From the IMG/VR virus record IMGVR_UViG_3300012931_000759, positions 1 to 64,000 of that record: a stretch of 64,000 bases of DNA. One strand, given 5' to 3'. Below are positions 52,150-63,241 of this stretch, one piece after another. The first letter of the stretch is position 1. Every line of letters starts with the position of its first letter. The notes below the pieces were generated by a model that was not told where the DNA came from, did not search any database, and saw only the letters and a program-made list of their open reading frames with translations. A program made the translations under genes and the position numbers.

Positions 52150-53049
52150 ATGATCAAGGATGGTCTCAAACTTATTGATATGCTGGTCGGTGCCATGCGT
52201 CAGCAGGCTTCTGAGGCAAGGACATCGAAGGCCGAGGTTGATATATCCGGAGGTGTGGATAGCGCAGTTGTCGCGGCCTTGGCATGTCGTGCATTCGGTA
52301 AAGACAATGTCATCGGTGTGTACAGTTCGATTAATTCTTCAGCAGAGTCTTGTCAATTGGCTGGGCTGGTGGCCGATAAGTTCGGTTTCAAACTCCTGAA
52401 ACTCGACCTGTCTGACGCGTATCGCCAAATAGTCATGGCCATTGCCACCGAGTTTGGACGTCTTGGTATCCCGTTTCCGGACCAGAATGACCCTCGACAA
52501 CGCACGGCGTTCGGGGGGTTGAGAAGCTGTCTGCGCGCCCCAGTGGGGCGCTTTGTGAACAGGGCGTTTGGTGGTATCCGCGAGGGTACTGGCAATAGGG
52601 ACGAGGATGAGTTGATCAGATTTTTCCAGAAGGGCGGCGATGGCGAGGTGGACAGTAACTGGATCGAGGGTCTGTTCAAGGGCGAGGTGTGGGAGTTGGC
52701 CGCATATCTTGGAGTTCCGCAGGAGATTATCGACGTAGCCCCGACGCCCGACCTGTGGGGAGGAACTGTACATACTGATGAGGGCGAATTGAAGGAGCTT
52801 ACTGGTGTGTCCCTGACCTACACCCGTCCAGGCGGACCAATGGGTACAATAGAGTGGGCCAGTAGAGAGAACGCGAGGAACGGCTGTGTCACGCGGAGCG
52901 GCTCGAATCCTGGCTGTATGGGATACAACGAGGCCCAGTCGACCATTATCCTGGCGATGCGAAAGTTGGAGCGATCCAGTAGGCACAAGACTTGTATGCC
53001 ACCATGTCTTCCGCGCGAGCGACTTCTCAAGGCGGGCGTGGTCGAATAG
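52150..53049 (+). CDS. nadE: NH3-dependent NAD+ synthetase
   Basis: ISGGVDSAV, GTGNRDE, GDG, KGEVWELA, PTPDLW, TDE. Confidence 0.88.
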   Translation: MIKDGLKLIDMLVGAMRQQASEARTSKAEVDISGGVDSAVVAALACRAFGKDNVIGVYSSINSSAESCQLAGLVADKFGFKLLKLDLSDAYRQIVMAIATEFGRLGIPFPDQNDPRQRTAFGGLRSCLRAPVGRFVNRAFGGIREGTGNRDEDELIRFFQKGGDGEVDSNWIEGLFKGEVWELAAYLGVPQEIIDVAPTPDLWGGTVHTDEGELKELTGVSLTYTRPGGPMGTIEWASRENARNGCVTRSGSNPGCMGYNEAQSTIILAMRKLERSSRHKTCMPPCLPRERLLKAGVVE

Positions 53050-53080: not shown

Positions 53081-53582
53081 ACAATCAGGAGGACATGAAC
53101 ATGACGAGTTTTCTCATTGGTCTGGGGATCGGCCTCACCGGGGGACCGGTGCTGGTGTATTTTGTGAAATTGGGCTATAAGAAGCTCAAGGAGAAGTTTG
53201 GTTCGGTCGAGTAGGCCGATAATGGCGGGCGACGGTTTTGCGACCCCCACCCACCACTGCGGTGGTGATCATGCCGTGCTATTAGATCAAATGGTGCGAA
53301 GCGTATGAGATGAAAACTAGGGTCGTAATGCCTTCGCTTGATCTTTTTGAGGAATGGAAAGGCGACGAGGCAGTCATATATACGGAGATCGGTTTTACCA
53401 AGGTGAAAACGGAGCTGGTGGACAAATAGGGTTTCTGTTGCTTGCCCACCGATCTTGAGCGCCTCGAGGACAAAAGCGACAAAAAAGACACAAACGATTC
53501 CGATAAGTTGTGAAATAGTTGGCTTTGGGAAGTCGACATCCGGAGAAAAAGCGTATATAGTAAGACACGACGAAAGAAATGT

Positions 53583-53699
53583 GGGGATGTTGCCAAACAG
53601 GAAAAGGCACCTGCTTCAGCATTCGGTTCTCGGGACCAAAACATCCGAAGCACACGCTGGGGCGCAAGCCCATTGTTGGTTCGATTCCAACCATCTCCA
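53583..53699 (+). ncRNA. tRNA-like RNA with the conserved module replacing the anticodon arm (family copy B1)
   Basis: GGGGATG/CATCTCC acceptor, D arm, TTCGATT T loop; module tgcttc..TCG-gttc/ggac-CAAA..gaagCACACGC. Confidence 0.75.
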
Positions 53700-53701
53700 C
53701 T

Positions 53702-53824
53702 GAAGACGCGCAAAGGAACGGAACTCACACGCGAAGATCAAATGGTTGATCATCTGTATTTGGAACAGAATGTTGCGGGTTCGAATCCCGTCGCACAAAT
53801 TAGTTCCCTCGCTCGCGCGTTTTC
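53702..53824 (+). ncRNA. Y-RNA-like RNA: terminal stem enclosing a tRNA-like body (family copy A1)
   Basis: GAAGACGCG/CGCGTTTTC ends, CAAA, GGAACT/AGTTCC, CACACGC; internal D, anticodon-like and T arms. Confidence 0.75.
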
Positions 53825-53831
53825 ATTTTTT

Positions 53832-53961
53832 GGGGAGTAGAGGCACCTGGGGTGCCAACTAGCCGTAAACTAGTACAACCTGTTACGTTACTCGGACGAC
53901 GAGAGTCGACCCAATCTACGGAAACGCACAAGCATTTGCCGTTCGAATCGGTAACTCCCCA
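53832..53961 (+). ncRNA. tRNA-Tyr(GTA)-like RNA with the module in the variable region (family copy B2)
   Basis: GGGGAGT/ACTCCCC; ACTAG ccGTAaa CTAGT; TCG..CAAT..CACAAGC; TTCGAAT. Confidence 0.75.
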
Positions 53962-54173
53962 CTGAAGACGCGCAAAGGATCAGCTGTCGATAATTGCTGT
54001 GAATTCTAATAGGAAACTGGAGCCGCATCTTGTCGGCTCCAATGACGTGCCAGGCAGAACGGGCTATTGTGGGGATAACGTGTCGTGTTAACCTGAAATT
54101 GTCCTTATGCCCCCCACCGGACGAGGCGGGGTCAATTATGCTAATACATCGCGATGGAAGGAAGGGTTGCTTA

Positions 54174-54470
54174 ATGAGTTTTTCGAGCTACCTAAACGAC
54201 TCATACATGGAATGGGCCAAAGCCCTGGCGTCGTCACCGTCGCCCGACACGGAGGAGGTGCAGACTGACGATGTTTGCGGCCAGCTGAGGGGCCTGCTCG
54301 TGAATGGCGAGCTGACAGACAAGGGGAGTTCCGAGGCAGAGGACGTCATCTGGAAGTTTGTTCTGAAGCAGAAGCCACGGCTAAGCATGCGAGCGTTCGG
54401 GCAACTTCGCAAGTCTTTGCCACCGGTTTTTCATCCTGCTATCGAGCGGGTGTTCCTGCGCTGTCTCTAG
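54174..54470 (+). CDS. Hypothetical protein
   Basis: ORF following a 35-bp repeat. Confidence 0.45.
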   Translation: MSFSSYLNDSYMEWAKALASSPSPDTEEVQTDDVCGQLRGLLVNGELTDKGSSEAEDVIWKFVLKQKPRLSMRAFGQLRKSLPPVFHPAIERVFLRCL

Positions 54471-54485
54471 GAATTTCTCTGCATC

Positions 54486-54758
54486 ATGCTAACTACATCG
54501 CGCTGGAAGGAAGGGTTGCTTGCGGCATCTGGCCGACACGCAGGGGAGAGCGAAACTGAAGCGGAGCGCTTCCAGTACCTGGCAATGCGAGTGGAACAGA
54601 GCGCTGGTTACCCAAATCGAATGCGGGACCTGGTCTTGAATTACTTGTGCCACATCAGTGCAACCGATCGGCCAGCGGTCCTCGATCGGCTCGCGAAGGA
54701 GGTCCCCCAGCCGTCGGTACTAGCCGTCGTGGAAGAAATTCGTCAACGCATTGCCTGA
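54486..54758 (+). CDS. Hypothetical protein
   Basis: 90-aa ORF. Confidence 0.45.
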   Translation: MLTTSRWKEGLLAASGRHAGESETEAERFQYLAMRVEQSAGYPNRMRDLVLNYLCHISATDRPAVLDRLAKEVPQPSVLAVVEEIRQRIA

Positions 54759-54784
54759 TTCTTTAGCATCTGGAATATTTCGAT

Positions 54785-54981
54785 GTCGGCGATGATACAC
54801 TTAACACGCAAACCAGGATCCCAAACGGCGCGCGAAAGCGGGCATTGGGACACCTGCGTGTTGAAGTCGGCCTTCGCCGTCGTCCTGCCCGAGCGCCCGT
54901 ATACCTTCGCGGGCAATAGCACCCTCGGTCAGGACTCCATCGGAGGCACAGGCGCATAGGATCGAGGGACTGTATACCGAC
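54785..54981. ncRNA. Candidate multi-helix structured RNA
   Basis: GTCGG/CCGAC closing stem; TTAACACGCA/TGCGTGTTGA; CGC-GAAA-GCG; TGCCCG/CGGGCA; CCCTCGGTC/GATCGAGGG. Confidence 0.5.
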
Positions 54982-55037
54982 CTTCCAACGCGCCTGGGCC
55001 CACAAGCCCGGGCGTTTTGGGTTTATGGGGAGAAAGA

Positions 55038-55625
55038 GTGCTAGATAAGACGCAAAGACCTGATAAACCAGAGAAACTCCATTGTAGGGAATGTAAACAG
55101 GAATTCCCATTTACTCCGGAGTTTTTCTATCGGGATCGAAAGCGCAAATATGGTCTCGATACCGTATGTAAGTTCTGTAGCAGACTTGGCACCAGGCGAC
55201 GCTATGCTGAAAACCCAGAATTGTGGCATCAAAGCAATCGTAAATATCGCCAAACCCATCTAGAAGAGACGAACAATAAAAAGAGAAAATGGGCAAAGAG
55301 GAATCCTGATAAGGAGCGGAACGCAAGGCTGAAATACACATACGGAATTACGCTGGACGAATTCAATCACATTTTGATGCTCCAAGAAAACTGTTGTGCT
55401 ATCTGCGGTTATTCTTTTGGGGGCAAGAAACCTAGCGTAGACCACGACCACACGACAGGTGTGGTTAGAGGGCTGTTGTGCGACAGGTGTAATTTCGGTA
55501 TAGGATGTTTCGAGGATGACGCCGCGCGACTTGAGAAAGCAGCCATTTACCTCAATAAGTGGAAGGAAAGCATCAAGAAGGTCGTAGGCGTCGAATCTCC
55601 CAACGAGATTGGTCTGGACATTTGA
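55038..55625 (+). CDS. Endonuclease VII-domain homing endonuclease
   Basis: YGITLDEF...CAICG...VDHDHTTGVVRGLLCDRCNFGIG. Confidence 0.9.
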   Translation: MLDKTQRPDKPEKLHCRECKQEFPFTPEFFYRDRKRKYGLDTVCKFCSRLGTRRRYAENPELWHQSNRKYRQTHLEETNNKKRKWAKRNPDKERNARLKYTYGITLDEFNHILMLQENCCAICGYSFGGKKPSVDHDHTTGVVRGLLCDRCNFGIGCFEDDAARLEKAAIYLNKWKESIKKVVGVESPNEIGLDI

Positions 55626-55849
55626 AAGGAAAAGATGATGAAATCCAAGAGAGAGAACACTGTCCCGAGTTGTGTGAGTTTGTGGAGAATGTCAAAGATA
55701 TGGTGAATGCTGACAAGCAGCAGGATGAGGAGATTCCAAAGTTTAAGGTGCCTCTTTCTAGTTGGCTGGGACTCGGCGCTGTGATTTTAGGAATCGTGGG
55801 TTTCGTCGTTGTAATGTTCCGCATCTGGATATAGGTTTCGTGAATAGTT

Positions 55850-55936
55850 GGGGTCGTTGACGATAAGGTCATCGAGCTGGGCCGTAACCCCAGCGCTGTA
55901 ATAGCCAATCCGATTCGAGTTCGGACGACCCCACCA
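55850..55936 (+). tRNA. tRNA-Tyr(GTA)
   Basis: GGGGTCG/CGACCCC, ccGTAac loop, long variable arm, encoded CCA. Confidence 0.8.
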
Positions 55937-56023
55937 AGGAGTAGCAGATGGATATACAATACTTTGTATTTCTTGACAGGTTGAAACGGATGCGCCGCGA
56001 CGGCGATTCCAATTGTGACGCGC

Positions 56024-56139
56024 GCATCCTTAGTGAAATGGAATCACAGCAGGCTTTTGTTGATGAAAGGAAATTAGTTGGTTCGATTCCAACCATCAGC
56101 GCAACCTGCACATTGGGGGTTCGAGTCCCTCAGGATGCA
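56024..56139 (+). tRNA. tRNA with an acceptor/T-arm minihelix nested in its anticodon loop
   Basis: Outer GCATCCT/AGGATGC and GCAGG/CCTGC; inner GTTGATG/CATCAGC plus GTTGG-TTCGATT-CCAAC. Confidence 0.7.
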
Positions 56140-56142
56140 AAT

Positions 56143-56214
56143 GAGGCTGAAGCTTTGACGGCGAAGCCGTAGGCTCTTAACCTATAGAACCGAGTTCGAC
56201 TCTCGGCAGCCTCA
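56143..56214 (+). tRNA. tRNA-Lys(CTT)
   Basis: GAGGCTG/CAGCCTC; GTAGG ctCTTaa CCTAT; TTCGACT. Confidence 0.85.
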
Positions 56215-56215
56215 C

Positions 56216-56286
56216 TTCGGAGTCGTCCAATAGGAAGGACGGCGGTCTTTGACACCGCATATCCCAGTCCGAGTCTGGCTCTGGAT
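56216..56286 (+). tRNA. tRNA-Gln(TTG)
   Basis: GCGGT ctTTGac ACCGC; atypical T loop TCCGAGT and short T stem. Confidence 0.7.
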
Positions 56287-56294
56287 TTAATATT

Positions 56295-56367
56295 GATCTC
56301 GTCGTCTAGGGGCAGTGGATAGGACACTCTCACTGTCCAGACGCCAGTTCAATTCTGGTCGAGGTCA
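56295..56367 (+). tRNA. tRNA-Glu(CTC)
   Basis: GATCTCG/CGAGGTC; GGACA ctCTCac TGTCC; TTCAATT. Confidence 0.75.
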
Positions 56368-56377
56368 CGAAAACTCC

Positions 56378-56531
56378 GATGCCCTTGGTATCGGCACCGT
56401 CGAATGCGCATTCCACGGTGGAGATGAGGCGATCGCCATCTTTTGGGATGGCGTGAGGTTTCAACATTGACAACTGAATAGTGGTAATTGACTGCGGTGA
56501 GCTGAGAATGTAGGCTCTCCGCCGGGGCATC
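56378..56531. ncRNA. Candidate structured RNA inside the tRNA cluster
   Basis: GATGCCC/GGGCATC closing stem; CGCCATC/GATGGCG; GCGGtGAGC/GCTCtCCGC. Confidence 0.45.
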
Positions 56532-56565
56532 GACGGCGCGAGCGTGCTGGGCGGTGTCCCATCGA

Positions 56566-56637
56566 GGGATCATAGCTCAATGGGCAGAGCGCGAGACCGA
56601 AAATTTCGTTACCCCCGTCCGAATCGGGGTGATCCCA
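56566..56637 (+). tRNA. tRNA-Phe(GAA)
   Basis: GGGATCA/TGATCCC; CGAGA ccGAAaa TTTCG; T loop TCCGAAT. Confidence 0.75.
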
Positions 56638-56643
56638 CAATAG

Positions 56644-56685
56644 ATCGCGCGCGTTGATGTAGCGGAAAAGTTTCGCGTCGCTTTT
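56644..56685 (+). promoter_or_regulatory. Conserved intergenic motif copy 4
   Basis: ATCGCGCGCGTTGATGTAGCGG...TTTCGCGTCGCTTTT. Confidence 0.65.
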
Positions 56686-56703
56686 GAATGAAAGGACGGC
56701 AGC

Positions 56704-57000
56704 ATGGGCAAGAGCATCGACCTGCGCGCCCAGTTCGGGCGCAAGTTCACCGAGGATGAGGAGGCTTTCGAGATGGCCCAGTGCGAGGAATGGATGGCCG
56801 ACGAGATGCGCTCCTACTGGAGAAGGATACAGCGCTCCTCGTGGCCGACTGAGGATCCAGGCGGGCGTTGCGCGAATTGCGGGCTTGAGGCGCGTTTTGC
56901 CAAAGCCTGTGTTGTTGGGGCCGCCTGCTACGATGGCGAGTGGTGTTGCTCTACCGAATGCGACGCGCAACTGACACGGGAAGGATGCCCGCTGGAATAA
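56704..57000 (+). CDS. Hypothetical Cys-rich protein
   Basis: AAGGA RBS; CANC...CCSTEC. Confidence 0.55.
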   Translation: MGKSIDLRAQFGRKFTEDEEAFEMAQCEEWMADEMRSYWRRIQRSSWPTEDPGGRCANCGLEARFAKACVVGAACYDGEWCCSTECDAQLTREGCPLE

Positions 57001-57206
57001 TAGACTAGGAAAGGGAAAGCGATGAAGCTGAGGAAGCTACGCAGGATACTGAGGCAGGCGGCGTTTAACGCCGATGGTCTCAACCCTCAGGTTGAGGTCT
57101 GTCTGGGCGACAAAATATTGCGCATCAAGCACATTGGGCAGTTTGGGGTTGTACCGGATGTCGTTATCGAACTTGAGGATCCCGAGAAAGAAACGGGTTG
57201 TTAATC

Positions 57207-57527
57207 ATGCCGCGCAAGAAGAAAGAGGCTCCTTCGGAGCCGAAGCCGACCAGGGTCGAAATCGAGACTTTTAGGGAACCTGATTCCTACTGGCTGGGCC
57301 AGCTCAGGAAAGACAATCCGTCCTGTTTCAACGGTGACATCCAGGTACACAGATATCGCGTGACGGTTGAACTGATCGAGGAGTCGCCAGAAGTGATCGG
57401 TGCGAGAATCCAGGAACTCTGGAACAATTGTGACAACTGGCATCATCACGATCCACTTAGATTCGCAGCCAAGAAAATTGGATGGGAGTTGAAAGGCGAC
57501 TTTGGGAACAAGAAGAAGGAGGCTTGA
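57207..57527 (+). CDS. Hypothetical phage protein
   Basis: PSCFNG...YRVTVELIEE. Confidence 0.6.
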   Translation: MPRKKKEAPSEPKPTRVEIETFREPDSYWLGQLRKDNPSCFNGDIQVHRYRVTVELIEESPEVIGARIQELWNNCDNWHHHDPLRFAAKKIGWELKGDFGNKKKEA

Positions 57528-57599
57528 CAATTGCTTTCGACATTATATAAATCGTCGGAAGCTGGAATTCAACTTTTGGGACACATTAAAGGAACAAAT

Positions 57600-57818
57600 A
57601 TGGCTGCCACAATCACGGTTCTCAAAAATAAGTTGAGTAAAGTGCGCAAACAGATAGAACTATTGAATTCACAAGAATCAGAATTATACAAACAGTTGGC
57701 CCTATTATGTGGGCGCACAGGTCACCAGTGGGAAGAGGAGTGGGCTGCGGTGGGTATTCATAAATACTCTCGAAAAATAGGATGTTTCCGTTGCGCGATT
57801 TGCGGTACACTGTCCTAG
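57600..57818 (+). CDS. Small coiled-coil/zinc-ribbon protein
   Basis: AAGGA RBS; C...GH.W...CAICG. Confidence 0.5.
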   Translation: MAATITVLKNKLSKVRKQIELLNSQESELYKQLALLCGRTGHQWEEEWAAVGIHKYSRKIGCFRCAICGTLS

Positions 57819-57830
57819 TGGAAAGGAGGC

Positions 57831-57858
57831 TTGACAATCGCCTCTAGGATGATAAATT
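57831..57858 (+). promoter_or_regulatory. Sigma70-like promoter upstream of the second ncRNA cluster
   Basis: TTGACA...TAAATT; AAGGAGGCTTGACAAT is also present at about 57516. Confidence 0.5.
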
Positions 57859-57871
57859 GATTGTTGTAAAT

Positions 57872-57978
57872 GGGGAGGTCGCCCAATTGGTAGGGCAACA
57901 GACCTGCTTCGCCTCTCGGTTTTTTGGAACCATTTGATGAAGCCTACAAGCATGCTCGTTCGAATCGAGCCCTCCCCA
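57872..57978 (+). ncRNA. tRNA-like RNA with the module replacing the anticodon arm (family copy B3)
   Basis: GGGGAGG/CCTCCCC; gcttc..TCG-gttt/gaac-CATT..gaagc-cTACAAGC; TTCGAAT. Confidence 0.75.
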
Positions 57979-57982
57979 CAAT

Positions 57983-58115
57983 GGGTCAGTAGCCGAATGG
58001 TATAGGCAAAAGCATTTTGGAGCTTTCAAACAGCAACAAGCTTTACCGCTCGGCTCCTCACGGAGCCATAAGGTAAAGCTCACAAGCATTGGAGGTTCGA
58101 TTCCTCCCTGGCCCA
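57983..58115 (+). ncRNA. tRNA-like RNA with the module in the variable region (family copy B4)
   Basis: GGGTCAG/CTGGCCC; GCTTTACC-gcTCG-GCTCC/GGAGC-CATAa-GGTAAAGC-tCACAAGC; TTCGATT. Confidence 0.75.
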
Positions 58116-58117
58116 AC

Positions 58118-58248
58118 AGGACGCGCAAAGGGGAAAAGTCTACAAGCGAATTAGCTCAGTCGGTTTGAGCGTCTGACTATGGATCAGAAGGTCAAGGGTT
58201 CAAATCCCTTATCCGCGACAAAATCCGACTTGCTCACTCGCGCGTCCT
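58118..58248 (+). ncRNA. Y-RNA-like RNA: terminal stem enclosing an Arg-like tRNA body with ATG anticodon (family copy A3)
   Basis: AGGACGCG/CGCGTCCT, CAAA, AAGTC/GACTT, TACAAGC, cacTCG; TCTGA ctATGga TCAGA. Confidence 0.75.
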
Positions 58249-58875
58249 AATTTTCTGTTCTACGATGCCGACAATGATATCTAGAAACCGTTGCCCTTTG
58301 GTTGGTTTGAAGTTTTTCATTGTCGACACGTCGATGATACAGAGAGCAATGCCCCTCTCGGCGCAGGCAGCGAATTTCCGATGGTCATTGGTTTGGATGG
58401 AGGCAAGTTTCTCCGTCCCGTGGATCGGCTCGTAATGGTAGATCCCGTTGAGTTCGAACGCTAAATTGAGGCTTGGAAAATGGATGTCGAGTTCGGAGTT
58501 GATCGCCTCTTTGGCGTTGAACATAATCTCCAGGTCGGGATAGAGTTTCCGCAGTTGCTCCTCCAGCCAGACCTCAAGTTTAGAGCGGCGGGTGCCATGG
58601 GTTTTGTGGAGATTGTTGTAGGTGGCGGCACATGATTTGGAACAGAAAAGATTGTTGCTTTTGCTGTGTTTCCTATTTTGAAGCAGGGTGCTTTTTCTGC
58701 GACCGAAAAGTGTACCGCATTGTTGGCAAGGGATCAATTTGGGAAGTCGTTTTCCACTCTGGTTGAATGCTTGGGCACACTTGTTGGAACAGAATTTGTA
58801 CTTGCGCGAGTCACGAATGAACCACGACCTGCGTCGTTTGAAGGTGGTACCACAGTTATCGCATTGAAGTTCCAT
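58234..58875 (-). CDS. PD-(D/E)xK endonuclease with N-terminal zinc fingers, inserted in the RNA array
   Basis: CxxC...FCSxxC repeats; SKLE...ELDI...LAFELNGIYHY. Confidence 0.75.
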   Translation of the reverse strand: MELQCDNCGTTFKRRRSWFIRDSRKYKFCSNKCAQAFNQSGKRLPKLIPCQQCGTLFGRRKSTLLQNRKHSKSNNLFCSKSCAATYNNLHKTHGTRRSKLEVWLEEQLRKLYPDLEIMFNAKEAINSELDIHFPSLNLAFELNGIYHYEPIHGTEKLASIQTNDHRKFAACAERGIALCIIDVSTMKNFKPTKGQRFLDIIVGIVEQKIRTRE

Positions 58876-58987
58876 AGATTTTCCTTGTTTTAATGCGAAA
58901 CAATTGATAGATTTCGACCCAAAATATCCACACGGCTCCACCCGCATTGCGCGGACAGAGCAATGAAGCCAATACAGGCTTCATCAC

Positions 58988-59125
58988 GCCCCCGTCGACC
59001 AATTGGAAGGTCAACAGTTTATTCAGACTGTCAAATCAGCACATCTGCTTCCGCACTCGGTTCTTTGAACCAATTGTTGAAGCCCACACGCGAAATTAGT
59101 CCAGGTTCGAATCCTGGCGGGGGCA
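58988..59125 (+). ncRNA. tRNA-like RNA with the module in the variable region (family copy B5)
   Basis: GCCCCCG/CGGGGGC; gcttc-cgcacTCG-GTTC/GAAC-CAAT..gaagc-cCACACGC; TTCGAAT. Confidence 0.75.
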
Positions 59126-59223
59126 CGCCGGGGACGACTGAAAACACCAGCCTTGTCCGGAAGGGGACAAGGGGTCATCCCCAATTTATTCCAAACAGCG
59201 GGAAAGACAGCAAGGAACCAGCG

Positions 59224-59538
59224 ATGATCGATTTTGACAATGCCTCGGCGAATCTGGTCGAGTACTTGAGGAGATGCGGTTCCCGCAACGAGGCCAACAT
59301 CTCCATGGACAGGGAAGATCACTACAAACCGATGTACAGGGCGGTGGCTCTGCTGGTTGCCCCAACGCATCCGTTCATCGACGAAATGCTCGGCGGCGAG
59401 AGACCCACAAGAGAACAGGCACTCGCTATTCTTTGGCATGCGCATCCGTATTTCGCGCATGTGCTGGATACGGAACCGGAGTTGTTTGAACAGATGTGGG
59501 AACACCACACCAGTGCGTGGGATTGGGACAAGAAGTAG
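59224..59538 (+). CDS. Hypothetical protein
   Basis: AAGGA RBS. Confidence 0.55.
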   Translation: MIDFDNASANLVEYLRRCGSRNEANISMDREDHYKPMYRAVALLVAPTHPFIDEMLGGERPTREQALAILWHAHPYFAHVLDTEPELFEQMWEHHTSAWDWDKK

Positions 59539-59585
59539 TTCAACTCGGGTCCTTGCGGACCCAAATATGGAAGGAGAATGACAAA

Positions 59586-61481
59586 ATGGTAGCCAGACAG
59601 AATGAAATTGACAGGCAGCGTGTCGAGGCTCTCGGTCCAGCCGAACGAATTATTCAGTCCCTTACAACCTATGTTGACCACGCTGTACATAATCGTCCAG
59701 GTTGTATAGTAGCAGATGGTCGAACCAAGGTTGGCGTGAGGTGGGATCCAGTGACCTGGAAGGAAGAGAACGGTCACAAGGTAGTCTACCGCCTCGATAA
59801 GGTGGGAACCAAGCAGAATAAGGTCAAGATCGGCGTCCTGGATGGCACCAAGGTTATGGATGGCGTTAGGCAGGTAGGCGAGTACCGTAAGCCGGGGATC
59901 TTCCCGGAGGTTGCGATTTGGCTATATCGGCAGATTGCTGAAGTGTACAAGCTGGATAATGAATTCGCAGCTCGTTGGGCATCTTGGGCTTTCACCAAGG
60001 AGCATCGTGATCTGAAGGTCGTGCTTGCGGCTTTCTTGCTTGTACAGAACCGCTGCGGCGAGCCGGTTGTCGAGGATGGTAAGGTTCTATTCCACGACGA
60101 GGACTTCAGGGATGTGGGCGAGGCAATGTGCCTTATTCGCGCCAAGAACGACCTCAACCCGAAACTCCTGCTCAGGATTGGCGACATTTTGAGTTTGCCG
60201 GGAGTTGCGGCGATCAACAGAGAACTCGGGTTTGGCAAGTCGGCTAGAACTCCAGCGAAGGGAAGGTACTACAAGGCGGTCGAGAAGTGGCTCCAGTACC
60301 GCGAAGATAACCCGAAGATGCTTGAAGGTCTCGTGGCAGCCGGTTTTCGCACCTCTGTGATGGAGCTTGCGCGCCGGGTCGGCTACAAGCCATCCACTCC
60401 AAAGTTTTTCGAGGTTTTGCGGTGGAAGCAGGTACAGGCTAAGGACGGCAGGCGTGAGTTGGCTATCGGAACCGAAGTCAAGAAGGCTGAGACTTGGAAG
60501 GGTCTTTCGGAGAAGAAAATCTGCGAGCGCATTGTAGCGACGAAGCCAAATTACAAGCGCATTGTTGGTTTACTTCCTTCGGAGGTTGGTCTAACCAGAG
60601 CTGTTATGATGGCAGCTATCGAGGCCGGATCGGTGTCGGACGCCGACCTGATCATTCTCACGCCGACGCTTGAGGAGTTAGGTCTCCTGACGGTGAAGGA
60701 AGTCTCCGAGCGTTGGAAGAAGGCGACCTCGGTGGCCGAGAATCAAAGGGCGGCGAACATCGCCAGGCGAGTGAAATCACAGGCGACCAAGGAGGCTCTC
60801 GCAGATGCGGCCGACAGCGTGGCGAAGAAGGCCATGGAAGAGGTCACAAAGGATCTGAGGATCTACGCGATTGTCGACAGGTCTGGCTCTATGCAGAGTG
60901 CGATCGACCGGGCCAAGGAGTACCTTGCCAAGCTGCTTGTGGGGTTTCCATTCGATAGGTTACATGTCAGCGTGTTCAATACTGTGGGTAGCGAGGTAGT
61001 GATTAAGCACCCGTCGGCCAAGGGCGTCGAGGCGGCCTTCAGGGGCTATTTTGCGGGTGGTGGCACGAGCTATGCCGAGGGTGTTAAGGCACTAGCTAAG
61101 CGCCGTCCGAAGGATGGTGAGGACGCCATCATGATCTTCGTCGGCGACCAGCTCGACTACGGTACACCGCAGCTGGTGGCGGCTGTCCAGGCCTCGGGTC
61201 TTAGGCCGGTGGCTTTCGGACTCCTAGAAGTCATAAGCCAGCAGTACGGGCGCGGCTCGATCGTCAGGGATGCCGCGCGGCAGCTGAATATTCCGTGCTT
61301 TGACATCGAAGAGTCAATCTTCGCTGACCCGTACGCCGTGACCAGGGTGCTCCGCAATCTGATCGCGAACACGCCGGTCGTGGCCGAGGCCCGCAGGGCC
61401 GTTGCCAGACAGACGCTGGTCGAAGAGATCCTCAAAACTCCGCTTTTACAGCTGCCTTTGTTTGCGCGATGCGGCAAATAA
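59586..61481 (+). CDS. VWA (MIDAS) domain protein with large N-terminal helical region; candidate divergent Ro60/TROVE
   Basis: IVDRSGSM, GGGTSY, FVGD; AAGGAG RBS; 631 aa. The VWA call is well supported; the Ro60 call is inference. Confidence 0.75.
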   Translation: MVARQNEIDRQRVEALGPAERIIQSLTTYVDHAVHNRPGCIVADGRTKVGVRWDPVTWKEENGHKVVYRLDKVGTKQNKVKIGVLDGTKVMDGVRQVGEYRKPGIFPEVAIWLYRQIAEVYKLDNEFAARWASWAFTKEHRDLKVVLAAFLLVQNRCGEPVVEDGKVLFHDEDFRDVGEAMCLIRAKNDLNPKLLLRIGDILSLPGVAAINRELGFGKSARTPAKGRYYKAVEKWLQYREDNPKMLEGLVAAGFRTSVMELARRVGYKPSTPKFFEVLRWKQVQAKDGRRELAIGTEVKKAETWKGLSEKKICERIVATKPNYKRIVGLLPSEVGLTRAVMMAAIEAGSVSDADLIILTPTLEELGLLTVKEVSERWKKATSVAENQRAANIARRVKSQATKEALADAADSVAKKAMEEVTKDLRIYAIVDRSGSMQSAIDRAKEYLAKLLVGFPFDRLHVSVFNTVGSEVVIKHPSAKGVEAAFRGYFAGGGTSYAEGVKALAKRRPKDGEDAIMIFVGDQLDYGTPQLVAAVQASGLRPVAFGLLEVISQQYGRGSIVRDAARQLNIPCFDIEESIFADPYAVTRVLRNLIANTPVVAEARRAVARQTLVEEILKTPLLQLPLFARCGK

Positions 61482-61718
61482 ATGAGCACAGCCATCCGGC
61501 TCGAGGCCACCGTGACTCCGAAGTCCTCCAAAGGCAGGATCGAGAGGCTTGAGGATGGCACACTGAAGATCTTCGTCCAGGCTCCAGCTGTCAATGGCCG
61601 GGCCAACGAGGCCGCTATAAGGCTTGTTGCCAAGTGGCTGCGTGTGCCTCCTCGTGCCGTGTCGATCATCGTGGGGCACCGTAACCGTAGGAAAGTGTTC
61701 CAGATCGAAGTGAATTAG
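61482..61718 (+). CDS. DUF167/YggU-family protein
   Basis: VTPKSS...APAVNGRANEA...V.I..G...R.K. Confidence 0.85.
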   Translation: MSTAIRLEATVTPKSSKGRIERLEDGTLKIFVQAPAVNGRANEAAIRLVAKWLRVPPRAVSIIVGHRNRRKVFQIEVN

Positions 61719-62175: not shown

Positions 62176-62247
62176 CGCGCGATAGCTCAATTGGTAGAGC
62201 AAGCCCTTGACCGGGCGGGATCCGGGTTTCGAGGCTCGGTCGCGCAC
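62176..62247 (+). tRNA. Degenerate tRNA (anticodon ambiguous)
   Basis: GCGCGA/TCGCGC stem and canonical TAGCTCAATTGGTAGAGC D arm; 6-nt anticodon loop, 8-nt T loop. Confidence 0.5.
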
Positions 62248-62260
62248 TAGGAGAAAGACA

Positions 62261-63241
62261 ATGGGTTGGCAGGACCTGCTCGCATCGGACGACGACAAGA
62301 AGACGCTTCCGTGGACGGGCGGCAGGCAGATCCACGATAGGGAGCGCACCTGGACGATCGAGGGGAGGCTCCCGGACGAGCACGGCTGGTACTCGTTCCG
62401 CGTGTCTGGCGGTCGCAAGGCCGAGCTGGAGGGTCCTATGGACCCCGATTCCGATTTCGAGAACGGCCACAAGCTCGCCAAGGGGTACCTGGTGGGAGAC
62501 CGGCTGATCCAGGACGACGCGAGGGTCGATCCCGACCCGGTCAGGCTGGTCGACCAGACGACGCCCGTGTTTCTGGTGGAGCCGGGTCTAGATCGGTTCG
62601 TGAGGGCGGTGGTAGCTAGGACAAGAGGCGGTCTAGTGTATATCAGACAGGAGTTCCCGCAGGGTTCCGAGGCGGCCGTTCAGATGGCCTACCAGGACCG
62701 CAAGGACTCGGTGGTACACGTGGCCGGGGTCACCCCGGCGCTCGACTTGGCGTTCCGCTGGCTCTCCGGCCAGAGGCTGGCGGCCGAGGAGCGCGAACGC
62801 GAGATGGCGCGTATCAGGGCCGAGGAGGAGCGCAAGTGGGCGGAAGCTGAGCGATTTAAGCAGGCGATGAAGGATTCTGGAACCGGAGCAGGCAGAAGGG
62901 CGCTGGCACAGCGCGATTTCAACACAGCTGCCAAGGCGGCTTTGAAACTCACTGGAGCGGAATTACTGGATGCTAGACCGTCATACAACCGACGTGAAAT
63001 GGTAGTTCAGTATCGGTTTCAGAACAGGCGACTTGAGTGTGTGGTTGATAAAGACACACTACGCGTGGTTGACTCTGGTATCTGTTTGACCGACCACCAC
63101 ACTGGCGTGAAAGGTGATATGCGTTTTACGCTTGAATCGCTTCCCACCGTTGTTGGTCAGGCGATACGGGAAAACAAACTTGTGGTGTACCGGCATGTTG
63201 ACGGAGATCGGGATTATGCCGACGACAATTGGGACGATTGA
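62261..63241 (+). CDS. Hypothetical protein
   Basis: AGGAG RBS; 326-aa ORF. Confidence 0.65.
   Translation: MGWQDLLASDDDKKTLPWTGGRQIHDRERTWTIEGRLPDEHGWYSFRVSGGRKAELEGPMDPDSDFENGHKLAKGYLVGDRLIQDDARVDPDPVRLVDQTTPVFLVEPGLDRFVRAVVARTRGGLVYIRQEFPQGSEAAVQMAYQDRKDSVVHVAGVTPALDLAFRWLSGQRLAAEEREREMARIRAEEERKWAEAERFKQAMKDSGTGAGRRALAQRDFNTAAKAALKLTGAELLDARPSYNRREMVVQYRFQNRRLECVVDKDTLRVVDSGICLTDHHTGVKGDMRFTLESLPTVVGQAIRENKLVVYRHVDGDRDYADDNWDD

What the first reader, a model, noticed from the sequence alone, without database searches (positions are those of the whole stretch)
53583..61481. Family of seven tRNA-chimeric ncRNAs sharing one conserved module, next to a VWA protein: candidate Ro60/Y-RNA-like system
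Seen: seven loci (53583, 53702, 53832, 57872, 57983, 58118, 58988) have tRNA D and T arms plus the same non-tRNA element. The element is stem B, an internal loop with CAAA/CAAT/CATA/CATT on one strand opposite (C/T)TCG on the other, then stem A followed by YACA(A/C)GC. Stem sequences differ between copies but pairing is kept (GTTC/GAAC, GCTCC/GGAGC, GACGCG/CGCGTY; GCTTC/GAAGC, GCTTTACC/GGTAAAGC, GGAACT/AGTTCC), which looks like covariation. A 631-aa protein with a helical N-terminal region and a C-terminal MIDAS VWA domain starts about 460 bp after the last copy. Known: Ro60/Rsr proteins are TROVE+VWA rings that bind Y RNAs through a conserved stem, and bacterial YrlA RNAs join that stem to a tRNA-like domain and are encoded near the Ro gene. 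Inference: the module is a binding site for the VWA protein, and this phage makes a panel of tRNA-mimic RNPs, possibly decoys for anticodon nucleases or tethers for RNA repair or decay enzymes.
Basis: partly seen in the sequence, partly recalled or inferred. Interest (0 to 1): 0.92.

Follow-up and report, generated by a model that had tools for sequence, protein, structure and literature searches.

The report
tRNA-like phage RNAs sharing one module
A huge phage, and dozens of uncultured relatives, encode clusters of tRNA-shaped small RNAs that all carry the same conserved two-helix element, a previously undescribed RNA family that may form Ro60/Y-RNA-like particles with a neighbouring VWA protein, although that partnership is not proven.

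Summary
All seven loci are tRNA-like RNAs that carry one module: stem A, an internal loop with invariant CUC, stem B, then ACA(A/C)G. The module has two circularly permuted forms. In five loci it is a hairpin in the variable-arm position. In two loci its halves flank a tRNA and are followed by a T-tract.

The family is large. Covariance models find about 150 hairpin-type and about 68 flanking-type copies near homologues of the 631-aa protein in about 60 huge-phage contigs. Nearly all lie on the gene's strand, and compensatory changes are strong. Rfam matches only the tRNA part, with no Y RNA family, and the Y-RNA CGAA motif is not a conserved module feature.

The protein has an intact MIDAS VWA domain behind a helical region. 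Ro60/TROVE structures are its best full-length fold matches, but TM-scores are only 0.34-0.43. The helical region alone matches nothing, and Pfam finds no TROVE domain.

Module RNAs and the gene co-occur in most contigs, but this is one phage clade and the region is a tRNA array. Anticodon loops are relaxed (U33 in 48%), which suggests mimics.

Verdict: a real, new RNA family. A Y-RNA-like RNP is the best reading (about 0.4) but is unproven.

The parts
53533..53561 (+). sigma-70-like promoter candidate (TCGACA-17-TATAGT), about 22 nt upstream of the first RNA
   Evidence: The total number of promoter-like sites in the region is not above chance, so only the position is suggestive.
53583..53699 (+). 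Hairpin-type tRNA-like RNA 1. It has acceptor, D and T arms. The module sits where the anticodon arm would be, and a small GNRA hairpin follows it.
   Evidence: Rfam tRNA 36.7 bits; R1 41.7 bits at 53606-53699
53703..53823 (+). Flanking-type (permuted) unit 2. Stem B and stem A are formed by the 5' and 3' ends around a tRNA-like body with a 3-bp acceptor stem. A T-tract follows at 53820-53831.
   Evidence: Rfam tRNA model positions 5-66 at 53731-53794; R2 94.5 bits
53832..53961 (+). Hairpin-type tRNA-like RNA 3. Its anticodon-like loop is CCGTAAA, and the module is in the variable-arm position.
   Evidence: R1 52.8 bits at 53875-53961
53963..53980 (+). Orphan 5' half of a flanking-type module. 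It is an 18-nt exact repeat of 53702-53719 with no 3' partner, so probably a recombination remnant.
   Evidence: read directly from the sequence
57831..57858 (+). sigma-70-like promoter candidate (TTGACA-16-TAAATT with TG), 14 nt upstream of RNA 4
57872..57978 (+). Hairpin-type tRNA-like RNA 4. It has no anticodon arm; the module follows the D arm.
   Evidence: Rfam tRNA 41.2 bits; R1 66.2 bits
57983..58115 (+). Hairpin-type tRNA-like RNA 5. It has an anticodon-like arm with an 8-nt loop, and the module has a 9-bp stem A.
   Evidence: Rfam tRNA 42.7 bits; R1 73.7 bits
58118..58248 (+). Flanking-type unit 6. The module halves enclose a high-scoring tRNA-His with anticodon AUG (58145-58219). A T-tract follows at 58251-58259.
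   Evidence: (tRNA 61.6 bits); R2 105.9 bits
58988..59125 (+). Hairpin-type tRNA-like RNA 7
   Evidence: R1 55.3 bits
59586..61481 (+). 631-aa protein with an N-terminal beta-rich segment (about residues 39-101), a helical region (about 107-420) and a C-terminal MIDAS VWA domain (about 421-600). It is the candidate partner of the RNAs.
62207..63241 (+). Conserved 344-aa protein of unknown family. It follows the VWA gene in relatives, where Prok-JAB and ThiF genes and then the module RNAs come next.

Best explanation
The seven loci are genes for stable small RNAs that use a tRNA fold as scaffold and display one conserved protein-recognition module. The module is stem A, an internal loop with invariant CUC opposite A, stem B, and a single-stranded ACA(A/C)G tail.

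The same module is built in two circularly permuted ways. In one it is a capped hairpin leaving the tRNA core at the variable-arm position. In the other it is the closing stem formed by the 5' and 3' ends around a tRNA, and it ends in a U-tract. The two forms are often transcribed as a pair (hairpin-type unit, flanking-type unit, T-tract) from a promoter just upstream.

The most likely reader of the module is the syntenic, highly conserved helical-plus-MIDAS-VWA protein. It has the domain order of Ro60. The products would then be Y-RNA-like RNPs in which a tRNA-shaped domain is tethered to the protein. Possible roles are acting as mimics or decoys of particular host or phage tRNAs, or recruiting tRNA-handling enzymes.

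Shown: the RNA family, its structure, its two topologies and its synteny. Inferred: that the module binds a protein, that the protein is the VWA protein, and every downstream function.
For: Structure and conservation:
- Hairpin-type alignment of 138 distinct copies: 91% of cells paired against 60% in shuffles, and 763 against 223 double-sided changes, 0 of 500 shuffles as high.
- Flanking-type: stems B and A are 92% and 88% paired, and every pair shows compensatory changes.
- CUC, ACA and G are invariant in more than 135 of 138 copies, while the stems change freely.
- The same ACA(A/C)GC lies before the T arm in one topology and before tRNA position 1 in the other. So it is conserved as part of the module, not as part of the tRNA core.

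Linkage:
- 50 of 63 non-redundant loci around VWA homologues hold a strong hairpin-type copy within 10 kb, on the gene's strand.
- Copies peak 2-5 kb downstream or less than 1 kb upstream of the gene, whereas ordinary tRNAs lie mostly upstream. Most loci without a copy are truncated.
- A module pattern searched in the whole viral collection gives 86 stretches in about 72 contigs. About 60 contigs are confirmed by the model or are already-known VWA contigs, and about 45 of those carry the gene. Every such contig above 200 kb carries it.
- A distant homologue (27% identity, HMM E 9e-35) in a 157-kb contig lies about 260 nt from a module RNA.

Protein:
- MIDAS is intact.
- Ro60/TROVE entries 9kop, 9l5y and 2i91 are the top PDB matches over about 550 columns, E 5e-8 to 1e-5.
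- A TROVE protein is among the top four BFVD matches.

Mimicry: anticodon-like loops recur across phages, but U33 is present in 48% and a purine at 37 in 84%. In 1183 ordinary tRNAs of the same loci the figures are 94% and 99%.

Precedent: tRNA-like Y RNAs are encoded next to Ro60 in bacteria and phages, with independently evolved topologies (PMC4201824). Phage phiLo Ro60 binds two upstream Y-like RNAs (PMC12135203).
Against: - No Y RNA/YrlA family of Rfam matches even at E<=10.
- CGAA is not a conserved feature of the module.
- No TROVE signal at sequence or profile level.
- The N-terminal 420 residues modelled alone (pLDDT 80.8) give no fold match below E 0.09 and no TROVE entry in the 50 matches listed.
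- Full-length TM-scores are only 0.34-0.43. The Ro60 hits may rest on the VWA domain plus generic helical repeats.
- The gene sits inside tRNA arrays and all carriers belong to one phage clade, so synteny may be inherited rather than functional.
- p344, JAB and ThiF genes are equally syntenic.
- About 15 module-bearing contig fragments show no VWA gene in the DNA available.
- There are no expression or binding data.
Confidence: 0.4

Rival explanations
1. The module is a cis-acting maturation and termination element of phage tRNA operons. It would be a processing stem cut by a host or phage endonuclease (of RNase III or E type, together with RNase P and Z), and stem B plus the U-tract would end transcription. 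It would have no link to the VWA protein.
For: - Flanking-type units enclose real-looking tRNAs whose 5' end falls inside the conserved motif, at ACA|AGC.
- 34% of these units have TTTT within 12 nt downstream, against 2.4% at random positions and 5% after hairpin-type units.
- The units are packed like tRNA operons behind promoter-like sites.
- Two helices separated by an internal loop resemble phage RNase III sites. This comparison rests on my own knowledge, not on a test.
Against: - In the hairpin-type the module lies inside the tRNA-like body, where a cut would split the RNA.
- More than 1000 ordinary tRNAs in the same arrays have no such element.
- Strictly invariant loop bases and a conserved single-stranded tail are not expected for RNase III.
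- The U-tract usually starts 2-4 nt after stem B, not directly at it.
Confidence: 0.2
2. They are working tRNAs with an oversized variable arm, or an arm kept as an identity or protection element. They would decode normally while resisting host anticodon nucleases.
For: - 131 of 136 hairpin-type RNAs have a 7-bp acceptor stem.
- The D-loop GG and the T-loop GTTCRANTC are kept.
- Loop types for Tyr, Gly, Gln, Met, Asn and Arg recur across phages.
- The tRNA-like bodies are up to 97% identical between phages whose module stems differ.
- The window's ordinary tRNA-Tyr also has C33.
Against: - U33 is present in only 48% of copies.
- Two window copies have no anticodon arm at all, and two have 8-nt loops.
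- Flanking-type units have no free acceptor end unless they are processed, and several have 3-bp acceptor stems.
- Odd A34 anticodons for Asp, His and Phe occur.
Confidence: 0.17
3. The module is an excisable element, that is an intron-like insert or a leader-trailer pair. One endonuclease-ligase system would remove it from both topologies, as the archaeal BHB system does for introns and for permuted or split tRNAs.
For: - Cutting at the positions that delimit the tRNA in the flanking-type would leave a normal 4-5-nt variable loop (GCAUU or similar) in most hairpin-type RNAs.
- The same A/C-rich linker precedes stem A in both topologies.
Against: - The junction is a 4x5 internal loop, not a bulge-helix-bulge.
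- Copies without an anticodon arm cannot give a tRNA.
- No module-less orthologue or paralogue was found at 85% identity or more.
- No ligase or splicing endonuclease was seen in the genes examined.
Confidence: 0.08
4. The module binds a different syntenic protein (p344, the ThiF-like E1 enzyme or a tRNA-modifying enzyme), or it is a small self-cleaving ribozyme of a new class.
For: - The order VWA, p344, JAB, ThiF, module RNAs is conserved.
- About 10 invariant unpaired bases flanked by variable helices, in permuted topologies, is the pattern typical of small ribozymes. This rests on my own knowledge.
Against: - No family could be assigned to p344.
- No Rfam ribozyme matches at E<=10.
- Nothing points to a cleavage site.
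Confidence: 0.1

Closest known systems
Bacterial and phage Y RNAs (YrlA, Yrn1, phiLo Yrl1/2) with Ro60/Rsr
   Same: - They are small RNAs with tRNA-like D and T arms, encoded in groups next to a protein that has a helical domain followed by a MIDAS VWA domain.
- The flanking-type has a long stem made of the 5' and 3' ends with a conserved internal loop.
- Several copies per genome are processed from clusters (PMC4201824, PMC12135203).
   Different: - No match to any Rfam family except tRNA, and CGAA is not conserved in the module.
- The stem leaves the tRNA at the acceptor end or at the variable-arm position, not at the anticodon position.
- Most copies keep a full cloverleaf with an anticodon-like arm.
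- The protein is not detectably TROVE.
tmRNA, including circularly permuted two-piece tmRNA genes
   Same: A tRNA-like RNA family whose genes exist in both standard and circularly permuted arrangements. It also occurs in phage tRNA regions.
   Different: ARAGORN reports no tmRNA. The RNAs have D and anticodon arms. The permutation concerns the added module, not the tRNA-like domain.
Archaeal BHB introns, and permuted or split tRNA genes
   Same: One structural element is found either inside tRNAs or formed by the leader and trailer around them.
   Different: The geometry is not bulge-helix-bulge. The setting is bacterial (sigma-70-like promoters, T-tract ends). No evidence of excision.
Class II tRNAs and allo-tRNAs with long variable arms (PMC5389517)
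   Same: An extra arm leaves the core between the anticodon and T arms. Many copies have long D stems with short loops.
   Different: - The arm is 45-60 nt long with a conserved internal loop and tail.
- The acceptor/T-stem configuration is 7/5 (7-bp acceptor, 5-bp T stem), not the 8/4 or 9/3 of allo-tRNAs.
- Anticodon loops are relaxed.
- The same arm also occurs outside the tRNA.

Membership tests
Y RNA / YrlA | Match to the curated covariance models of the family | tested here: not met
   Rfam 15 at gathering score and at E<=10 gives only tRNA hits in 53300-59300, and only tRNA in eight related loci.
Y RNA / YrlA | Long stem formed by the 5' and 3' ends, holding a conserved bulge or internal loop (the Ro60 site) | tested here: inconclusive
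   Met in form by the two flanking-type units and about 68 relatives. The five hairpin-type units have the element as an internal hairpin instead.
Y RNA / YrlA | Conserved CGAA motif in the protein-binding helix (PMC12135203) | tested here: not met
   The invariant bases are CUC plus a closing G-C pair, and ACA(A/C)G. CGAA is not conserved.
Y RNA / YrlA | tRNA-like domain with D- and T-arm mimicry | tested here: met
   Rfam tRNA hits of 36-62 bits on six of the seven loci (the seventh, 58988-59125, reaches only 18 bits). The T loop is invariant and the D-loop GG is kept.
Y RNA / YrlA | Encoded next to a Ro60 orthologue and bound by it | not testable with these tools
   Synteny with the VWA protein is strong. 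However, its orthology to Ro60 is unproven and binding needs an experiment.
Ro60 / TROVE proteins | TROVE (HEAT-like ring) domain detectable by sequence profile | tested here: not met
   Pfam at E<=10 on 30 family members shows only VWA families. A profile search of PDB finds only VWA domains. hhalign against a phage family annotated as TROVE gives 0.2% probability, but that family itself has no Pfam TROVE hit.
Ro60 / TROVE proteins | Fold of the helical domain resembles TROVE | tested here: inconclusive
   For the full-length model the top PDB hits are 9kop, 9l5y and 2i91, at E 5e-8 to 1e-5 over about 550 columns, but with TM-scores of 0.22-0.43. The N-terminal domain alone has no hit below E 0.09 and no TROVE entry in the 50 matches listed.
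Ro60 / TROVE proteins | C-terminal VWA domain with a MIDAS motif | tested here: met
   VWA_2 at E 3.3e-6. D431, S433, S435, T494 and D521 are invariant in 30 homologues. A distant homologue has a weak vWA_Ro60 hit at E 0.1.
Canonical decoding tRNA | 7-nt anticodon loop with U33 and a purine at position 37 | tested here: not met
   Hairpin-type copies have U33 in 48% and a purine at 37 in 84%; 20 of 131 have no 7-nt loop. Ordinary tRNAs of the same loci have 94% and 99%.
Intrinsic terminator | GC-rich stem directly followed by a U-tract | tested here: inconclusive
   Stem B of flanking-type units is followed by TTTT within 12 nt in 34% of cases, against 2.4% at random. The tract usually starts 2-4 nt after the stem, and the stem closes a 100-nt domain. 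The standard scan does not call them.
Known small self-cleaving ribozymes | Match to Rfam models such as hammerhead, twister, pistol, hatchet or hairpin | tested here: not met
   No such hit at E<=10.

The most novel reading that the evidence does not exclude
The module is not a passive protein handle. It would be the signal of a previously unknown RNA-processing system of huge phages: an element cut out of, or cut within, tRNA-shaped RNAs in both of its topologies, either by self-cleavage or by a dedicated phage enzyme. That would make it a bacterial-virus counterpart of archaeal BHB-based splicing and permuted tRNA genes. Alternatively, the module turns full tRNAs into protein-tethered decoys that disarm host anticodon nucleases.
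Probability: 0.15. Interest if true: 0.92.

Novelty: new variant of a known kind. Interest (0 to 1): 0.76.

Why it matters
- This is a well-supported structured RNA family with well over 200 model-confirmed copies in the loci examined. It is absent from Rfam and I found it in no paper I searched. It is confined to uncultured huge phages of 100-600 kb.
- It shows one RNA module used in two circularly permuted contexts on a tRNA scaffold, which is rare outside ribozymes and tmRNA.
- If the neighbouring protein binds it, the Ro60/Y-RNA principle would extend to a protein family too diverged for sequence methods, and to RNAs that keep a whole cloverleaf. That would give a tractable system for asking what tRNA mimicry by Y-like RNAs is for, which is still an open question for bacterial Ro60.
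- If instead the module is a processing or protection device, it bears on how phages with 30-60 tRNA genes mature and defend them.

Tried and rejected
- Rfam at permissive threshold gave only tRNA hits.
- Megablast of the region against GenBank phages found nothing. tblastn of the protein found one uncultured virus, Rctr197k, annotated as hypothetical.
- PHROGs, NCBIfam and PDB sequence searches of the protein and of p344 found nothing useful.
- I tried to bridge the protein to TROVE in four ways. All failed.
  - A distant homologue family has no Pfam annotation at all.
  - The Vibrio phage pir03 protein annotated as TROVE has no Pfam TROVE hit and only four relatives.
  - hhalign between that family and this one gives 0.2% probability.
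  - The N-terminal-domain model gives no fold match.
- I searched for module-less orthologues that would define an empty site. None was found.
- CobT-like cobaltochelatase (about 630 aa with a C-terminal VWA domain) was considered for the protein. It was dropped because no CobT, CobS or AAA family was found in the protein or its neighbours.
- K-turn, loop E, tetraloop receptor, hammerhead, hairpin-ribozyme and group II domain V motifs were compared by eye with the internal loop. None fits.
- The supplementary tables of the YrlA paper are not held.

Full report
**Setting.** The window is the first 64 kb of a 340-kb viral contig, IMGVR_UViG_3300012931_000759. The finding lies in a tRNA region that also holds seven ARAGORN tRNAs, an endonuclease VII/HNH gene and an HNH homing-endonuclease gene.

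**The observation.** Five RNAs have a 7-bp acceptor stem, a D arm and a canonical T arm, and carry an irregular hairpin between the D or anticodon arm and the T arm. They lie at 53583-53699, 53832-53961, 57872-57978, 57983-58115 and 58988-59125. Two RNAs, at 53703-53823 and 58118-58248, have the same element turned inside out. Their 5' end supplies the 3' strands of stems B and A, then comes a tRNA-like body, and the 3' end supplies the 5' strands. Rfam calls six of the seven loci tRNA with large insertions or truncated ends (the seventh, 58988-59125, reaches only 18 bits), and nothing else.

**The module in detail.** A simple descriptor was run over the window and 72 loci fetched around homologues of the neighbouring protein. 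It required perfect stem A, any loop ending in TC, stem B starting with G, a 3' loop, and YACAWGY. It gave 124 hits on the strand of the protein gene, 13 on the other strand and about 10 per strand in shuffled sequence.

A covariance model of the hairpin form plus the T arm (R1) found 202 matches at E<=0.01, nearly all on the + strand. In the alignment of the best 150 matches:
- 91% of cells are paired, against 60% after shuffling and 34-53% with slid partners.
- There are 763 double-sided changes against 223 expected.

A second model of the flanking form (R2) found about 68 full-length units at 65 bits or more, clearly separated from ordinary tRNAs, which match only the inner part. Stems B and A are 92% and 88% paired, with compensatory changes at every pair.

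The invariant bases are CUC at the end of the 5' loop strand, the G-C pair that closes stem B, mostly A at the start of the 3' loop strand, and ACA(A/C)G after stem A. Hairpin caps are often GNRA or UUCG. These alignments are fitted to the models, which favours pairing. The strand asymmetry, the slid controls and the descriptor result do not depend on that.

**Anatomy of the RNAs.**
- *Hairpin-type bodies.* Of 136 distinct hairpin-type copies, 131 have a 7-bp acceptor stem. Most have a D arm that keeps the GG of the D loop, and an anticodon-like arm. Many also have a small GNRA hairpin. An A/C-rich linker (consensus A-N-C-C-N) then leads into the module, followed by 2-5 nt and the T arm.
- *Anticodon-like loops.* The loops fall into types that recur across phages (CGGTAAA, CTTCCAC, ATTTGGA, NNCATAA, CGGTTAA, ATACGGA). 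However, U33 is present in only 48% and a purine at position 37 in 84%. In 1183 ordinary tRNAs of the same loci the figures are 94% and 99%. The tRNA-like bodies of one type can be 87-97% identical between phages whose module stems have diverged.
- *Flanking-type tRNAs.* In flanking-type units ARAGORN often finds a complete tRNA that begins 4-5 nt into the conserved motif, at ACA|AGC. An A/C-rich trailer follows it. The identities are diverse and include unusual A34 anticodons: Asp AUC three times, His AUG, Phe AAA and Val AAC. Other units have only a 3-bp acceptor stem.
- *Pairing of units.* Thirty-nine of 131 hairpin-type RNAs are followed 3-11 nt later by a flanking-type unit.
- *Transcript ends.* Flanking-type units are followed by TTTT within 12 nt in 34% of cases, against 2.4% at random positions. 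In the window, promoter-like sites lie 22 and 14 nt upstream of the first RNA of each cluster.

**The protein.** ORF 59586-61481 has more than 1500 homologues of 620-630 aa, mostly 60-85% identical among the 120 listed. Nearly all come from metagenomes and none has a functional name. Only VWA families are found by Pfam, and the MIDAS residues are invariant.

An AlphaFold model (pLDDT 79.5) shows two short helices, a beta-rich segment, a long helical region and the VWA domain. Foldseek ranks the phage phiLo TROVE/Ro60 structures and Xenopus Ro60 first in PDB, over about 550 aligned columns at E 5e-8 to 1e-5, but with TM-scores of 0.22-0.43. A TROVE protein and a DUF2828 protein are among the best BFVD matches.

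The first 420 residues modelled alone (pLDDT 80.8) match nothing significantly, and no TROVE entry is among the 50 matches listed. Attempts to bridge to TROVE through a distant homologue family and through a phage protein annotated as TROVE failed. So the protein shares its domain order and VWA domain with Ro60, but homology of its helical domain is unproven.

**Linkage.**
- Strong hairpin-type copies occur within 10 kb of the gene in 50 of 63 non-redundant loci. Most of the other loci are cut short.
- The copies peak 2-5 kb downstream or within 1 kb upstream of the gene, whereas ordinary tRNAs lie mainly upstream.
- The usual order is VWA gene, a conserved 344-aa protein, Prok-JAB, ThiF, then the RNAs. 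In the window the RNAs lie upstream instead, and no further copies occur down to contig position 71478.
- In the converse direction, an exact module pattern searched in the whole viral collection matched only 86 stretches. About 60 contigs are confirmed by R1 or were already known. About 45 of them carry the gene, including every contig above 200 kb. The remaining 15 or so are 28-152-kb fragments in which the gene was not seen in the DNA at hand.
- A 27%-identical homologue in a 157-kb contig lies about 260 nt from a module RNA.
- All of this is one clade, so the co-occurrence is not made of independent events.

**Interpretation.** The RNA family and its structure are established. The same single-stranded ACA(A/C)GC is conserved whether it precedes the T arm or tRNA position 1. 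The loop bases are invariant while the stems drift. Both facts argue that the module is read as a unit by a specific factor. The syntenic VWA protein is the first candidate, and the Ro60/Y-RNA system is the closest precedent (PMC4201824, PMC12135203, PMC7824862). I put this at about 0.4.

The rivals, and my estimate for each:
- a processing and termination element, 0.2;
- real tRNAs with a giant arm, 0.17;
- another partner protein or a ribozyme, 0.1;
- an excisable element, 0.08.

None of these can be excluded without RNA-end data and binding assays.

**Novelty.** No Rfam family and no paper found in five literature searches describes these RNAs. The only GenBank relative of the protein is annotated as hypothetical, and no such RNAs are annotated there.

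Noticed in passing
window 56024-56139: A tRNA (Rfam 50.8 bits) has a 47-nt insert in its anticodon loop. The insert itself forms a mini-helix with a perfect T arm, almost identical to the T arm of RNA 1. ARAGORN reads part of it as tRNA-Ser(cga). It is a different kind of nested tRNA-like element.
   Followed up: partly
window 58145-58219; L006 4488-4562; L049, L035 and L047 flanking-type units: Some tRNAs carry A34 in two-codon boxes (His AUG, Asp AUC, Phe AAA), which is very unusual. They are concentrated inside flanking-type units (9 of 27 tRNAs have A34, against 57 of 1183 overall). This may be escape from, or bait for, nucleases that cut at G34/Q34.
   Followed up: partly
window 53963-53980 and 53702-53719: An exact 18-nt repeat (21 nt counting the CCA that ends the preceding RNA) starts flanking-type unit 2. 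The second copy has no 3' partner and is followed by about 3.9 kb of small ORFs, an endonuclease VII/HNH gene and ordinary tRNAs. It looks like a unit broken by recombination or insertion.
   Followed up: no
window 62207-63241; L017 12236-15023; L048 11683-14387: The gene order VWA, 344-aa unknown protein (49-50% identical between phages), Prok-JAB, ThiF-like E1 is conserved between the VWA gene and the RNA cluster. It could be a ubiquitin-like or sulfur-transfer module, perhaps for tRNA thiolation.
   Followed up: partly
protein P0007: One homologue of the VWA protein is 1043 aa long and carries intein and homing-endonuclease domains (PF14528, PF14890). Inteins usually sit in essential, highly conserved proteins.
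   Followed up: no
window 55850-55936: The ordinary tRNA-Tyr(gta) has C33 instead of U33. C33 occurs in 64 of 1183 tRNAs of these phages.
   Followed up: partly
window 55017-55625 (+) and 58234-58947 (-): Endonuclease VII/HNH and HNH homing-endonuclease genes are interspersed among the tRNA and module clusters, as in T4- and T5-like tRNA regions.
   Followed up: no
window 52150-53049 and 61482-61718: An NAD synthase gene lies directly upstream of the first RNA cluster, and a DUF167 (YggU) gene lies directly after the VWA gene.
   Followed up: no
L097 738-2210 (contig IMGVR_UViG_3300049215_000686): A sister family of the VWA protein (520-640 aa, at least 180 members, no Pfam annotation) occurs in phage contigs of about 150 kb. 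In L097 the gene as called lacks the N-terminal beta-rich segment and sits next to a module RNA.
   Followed up: partly
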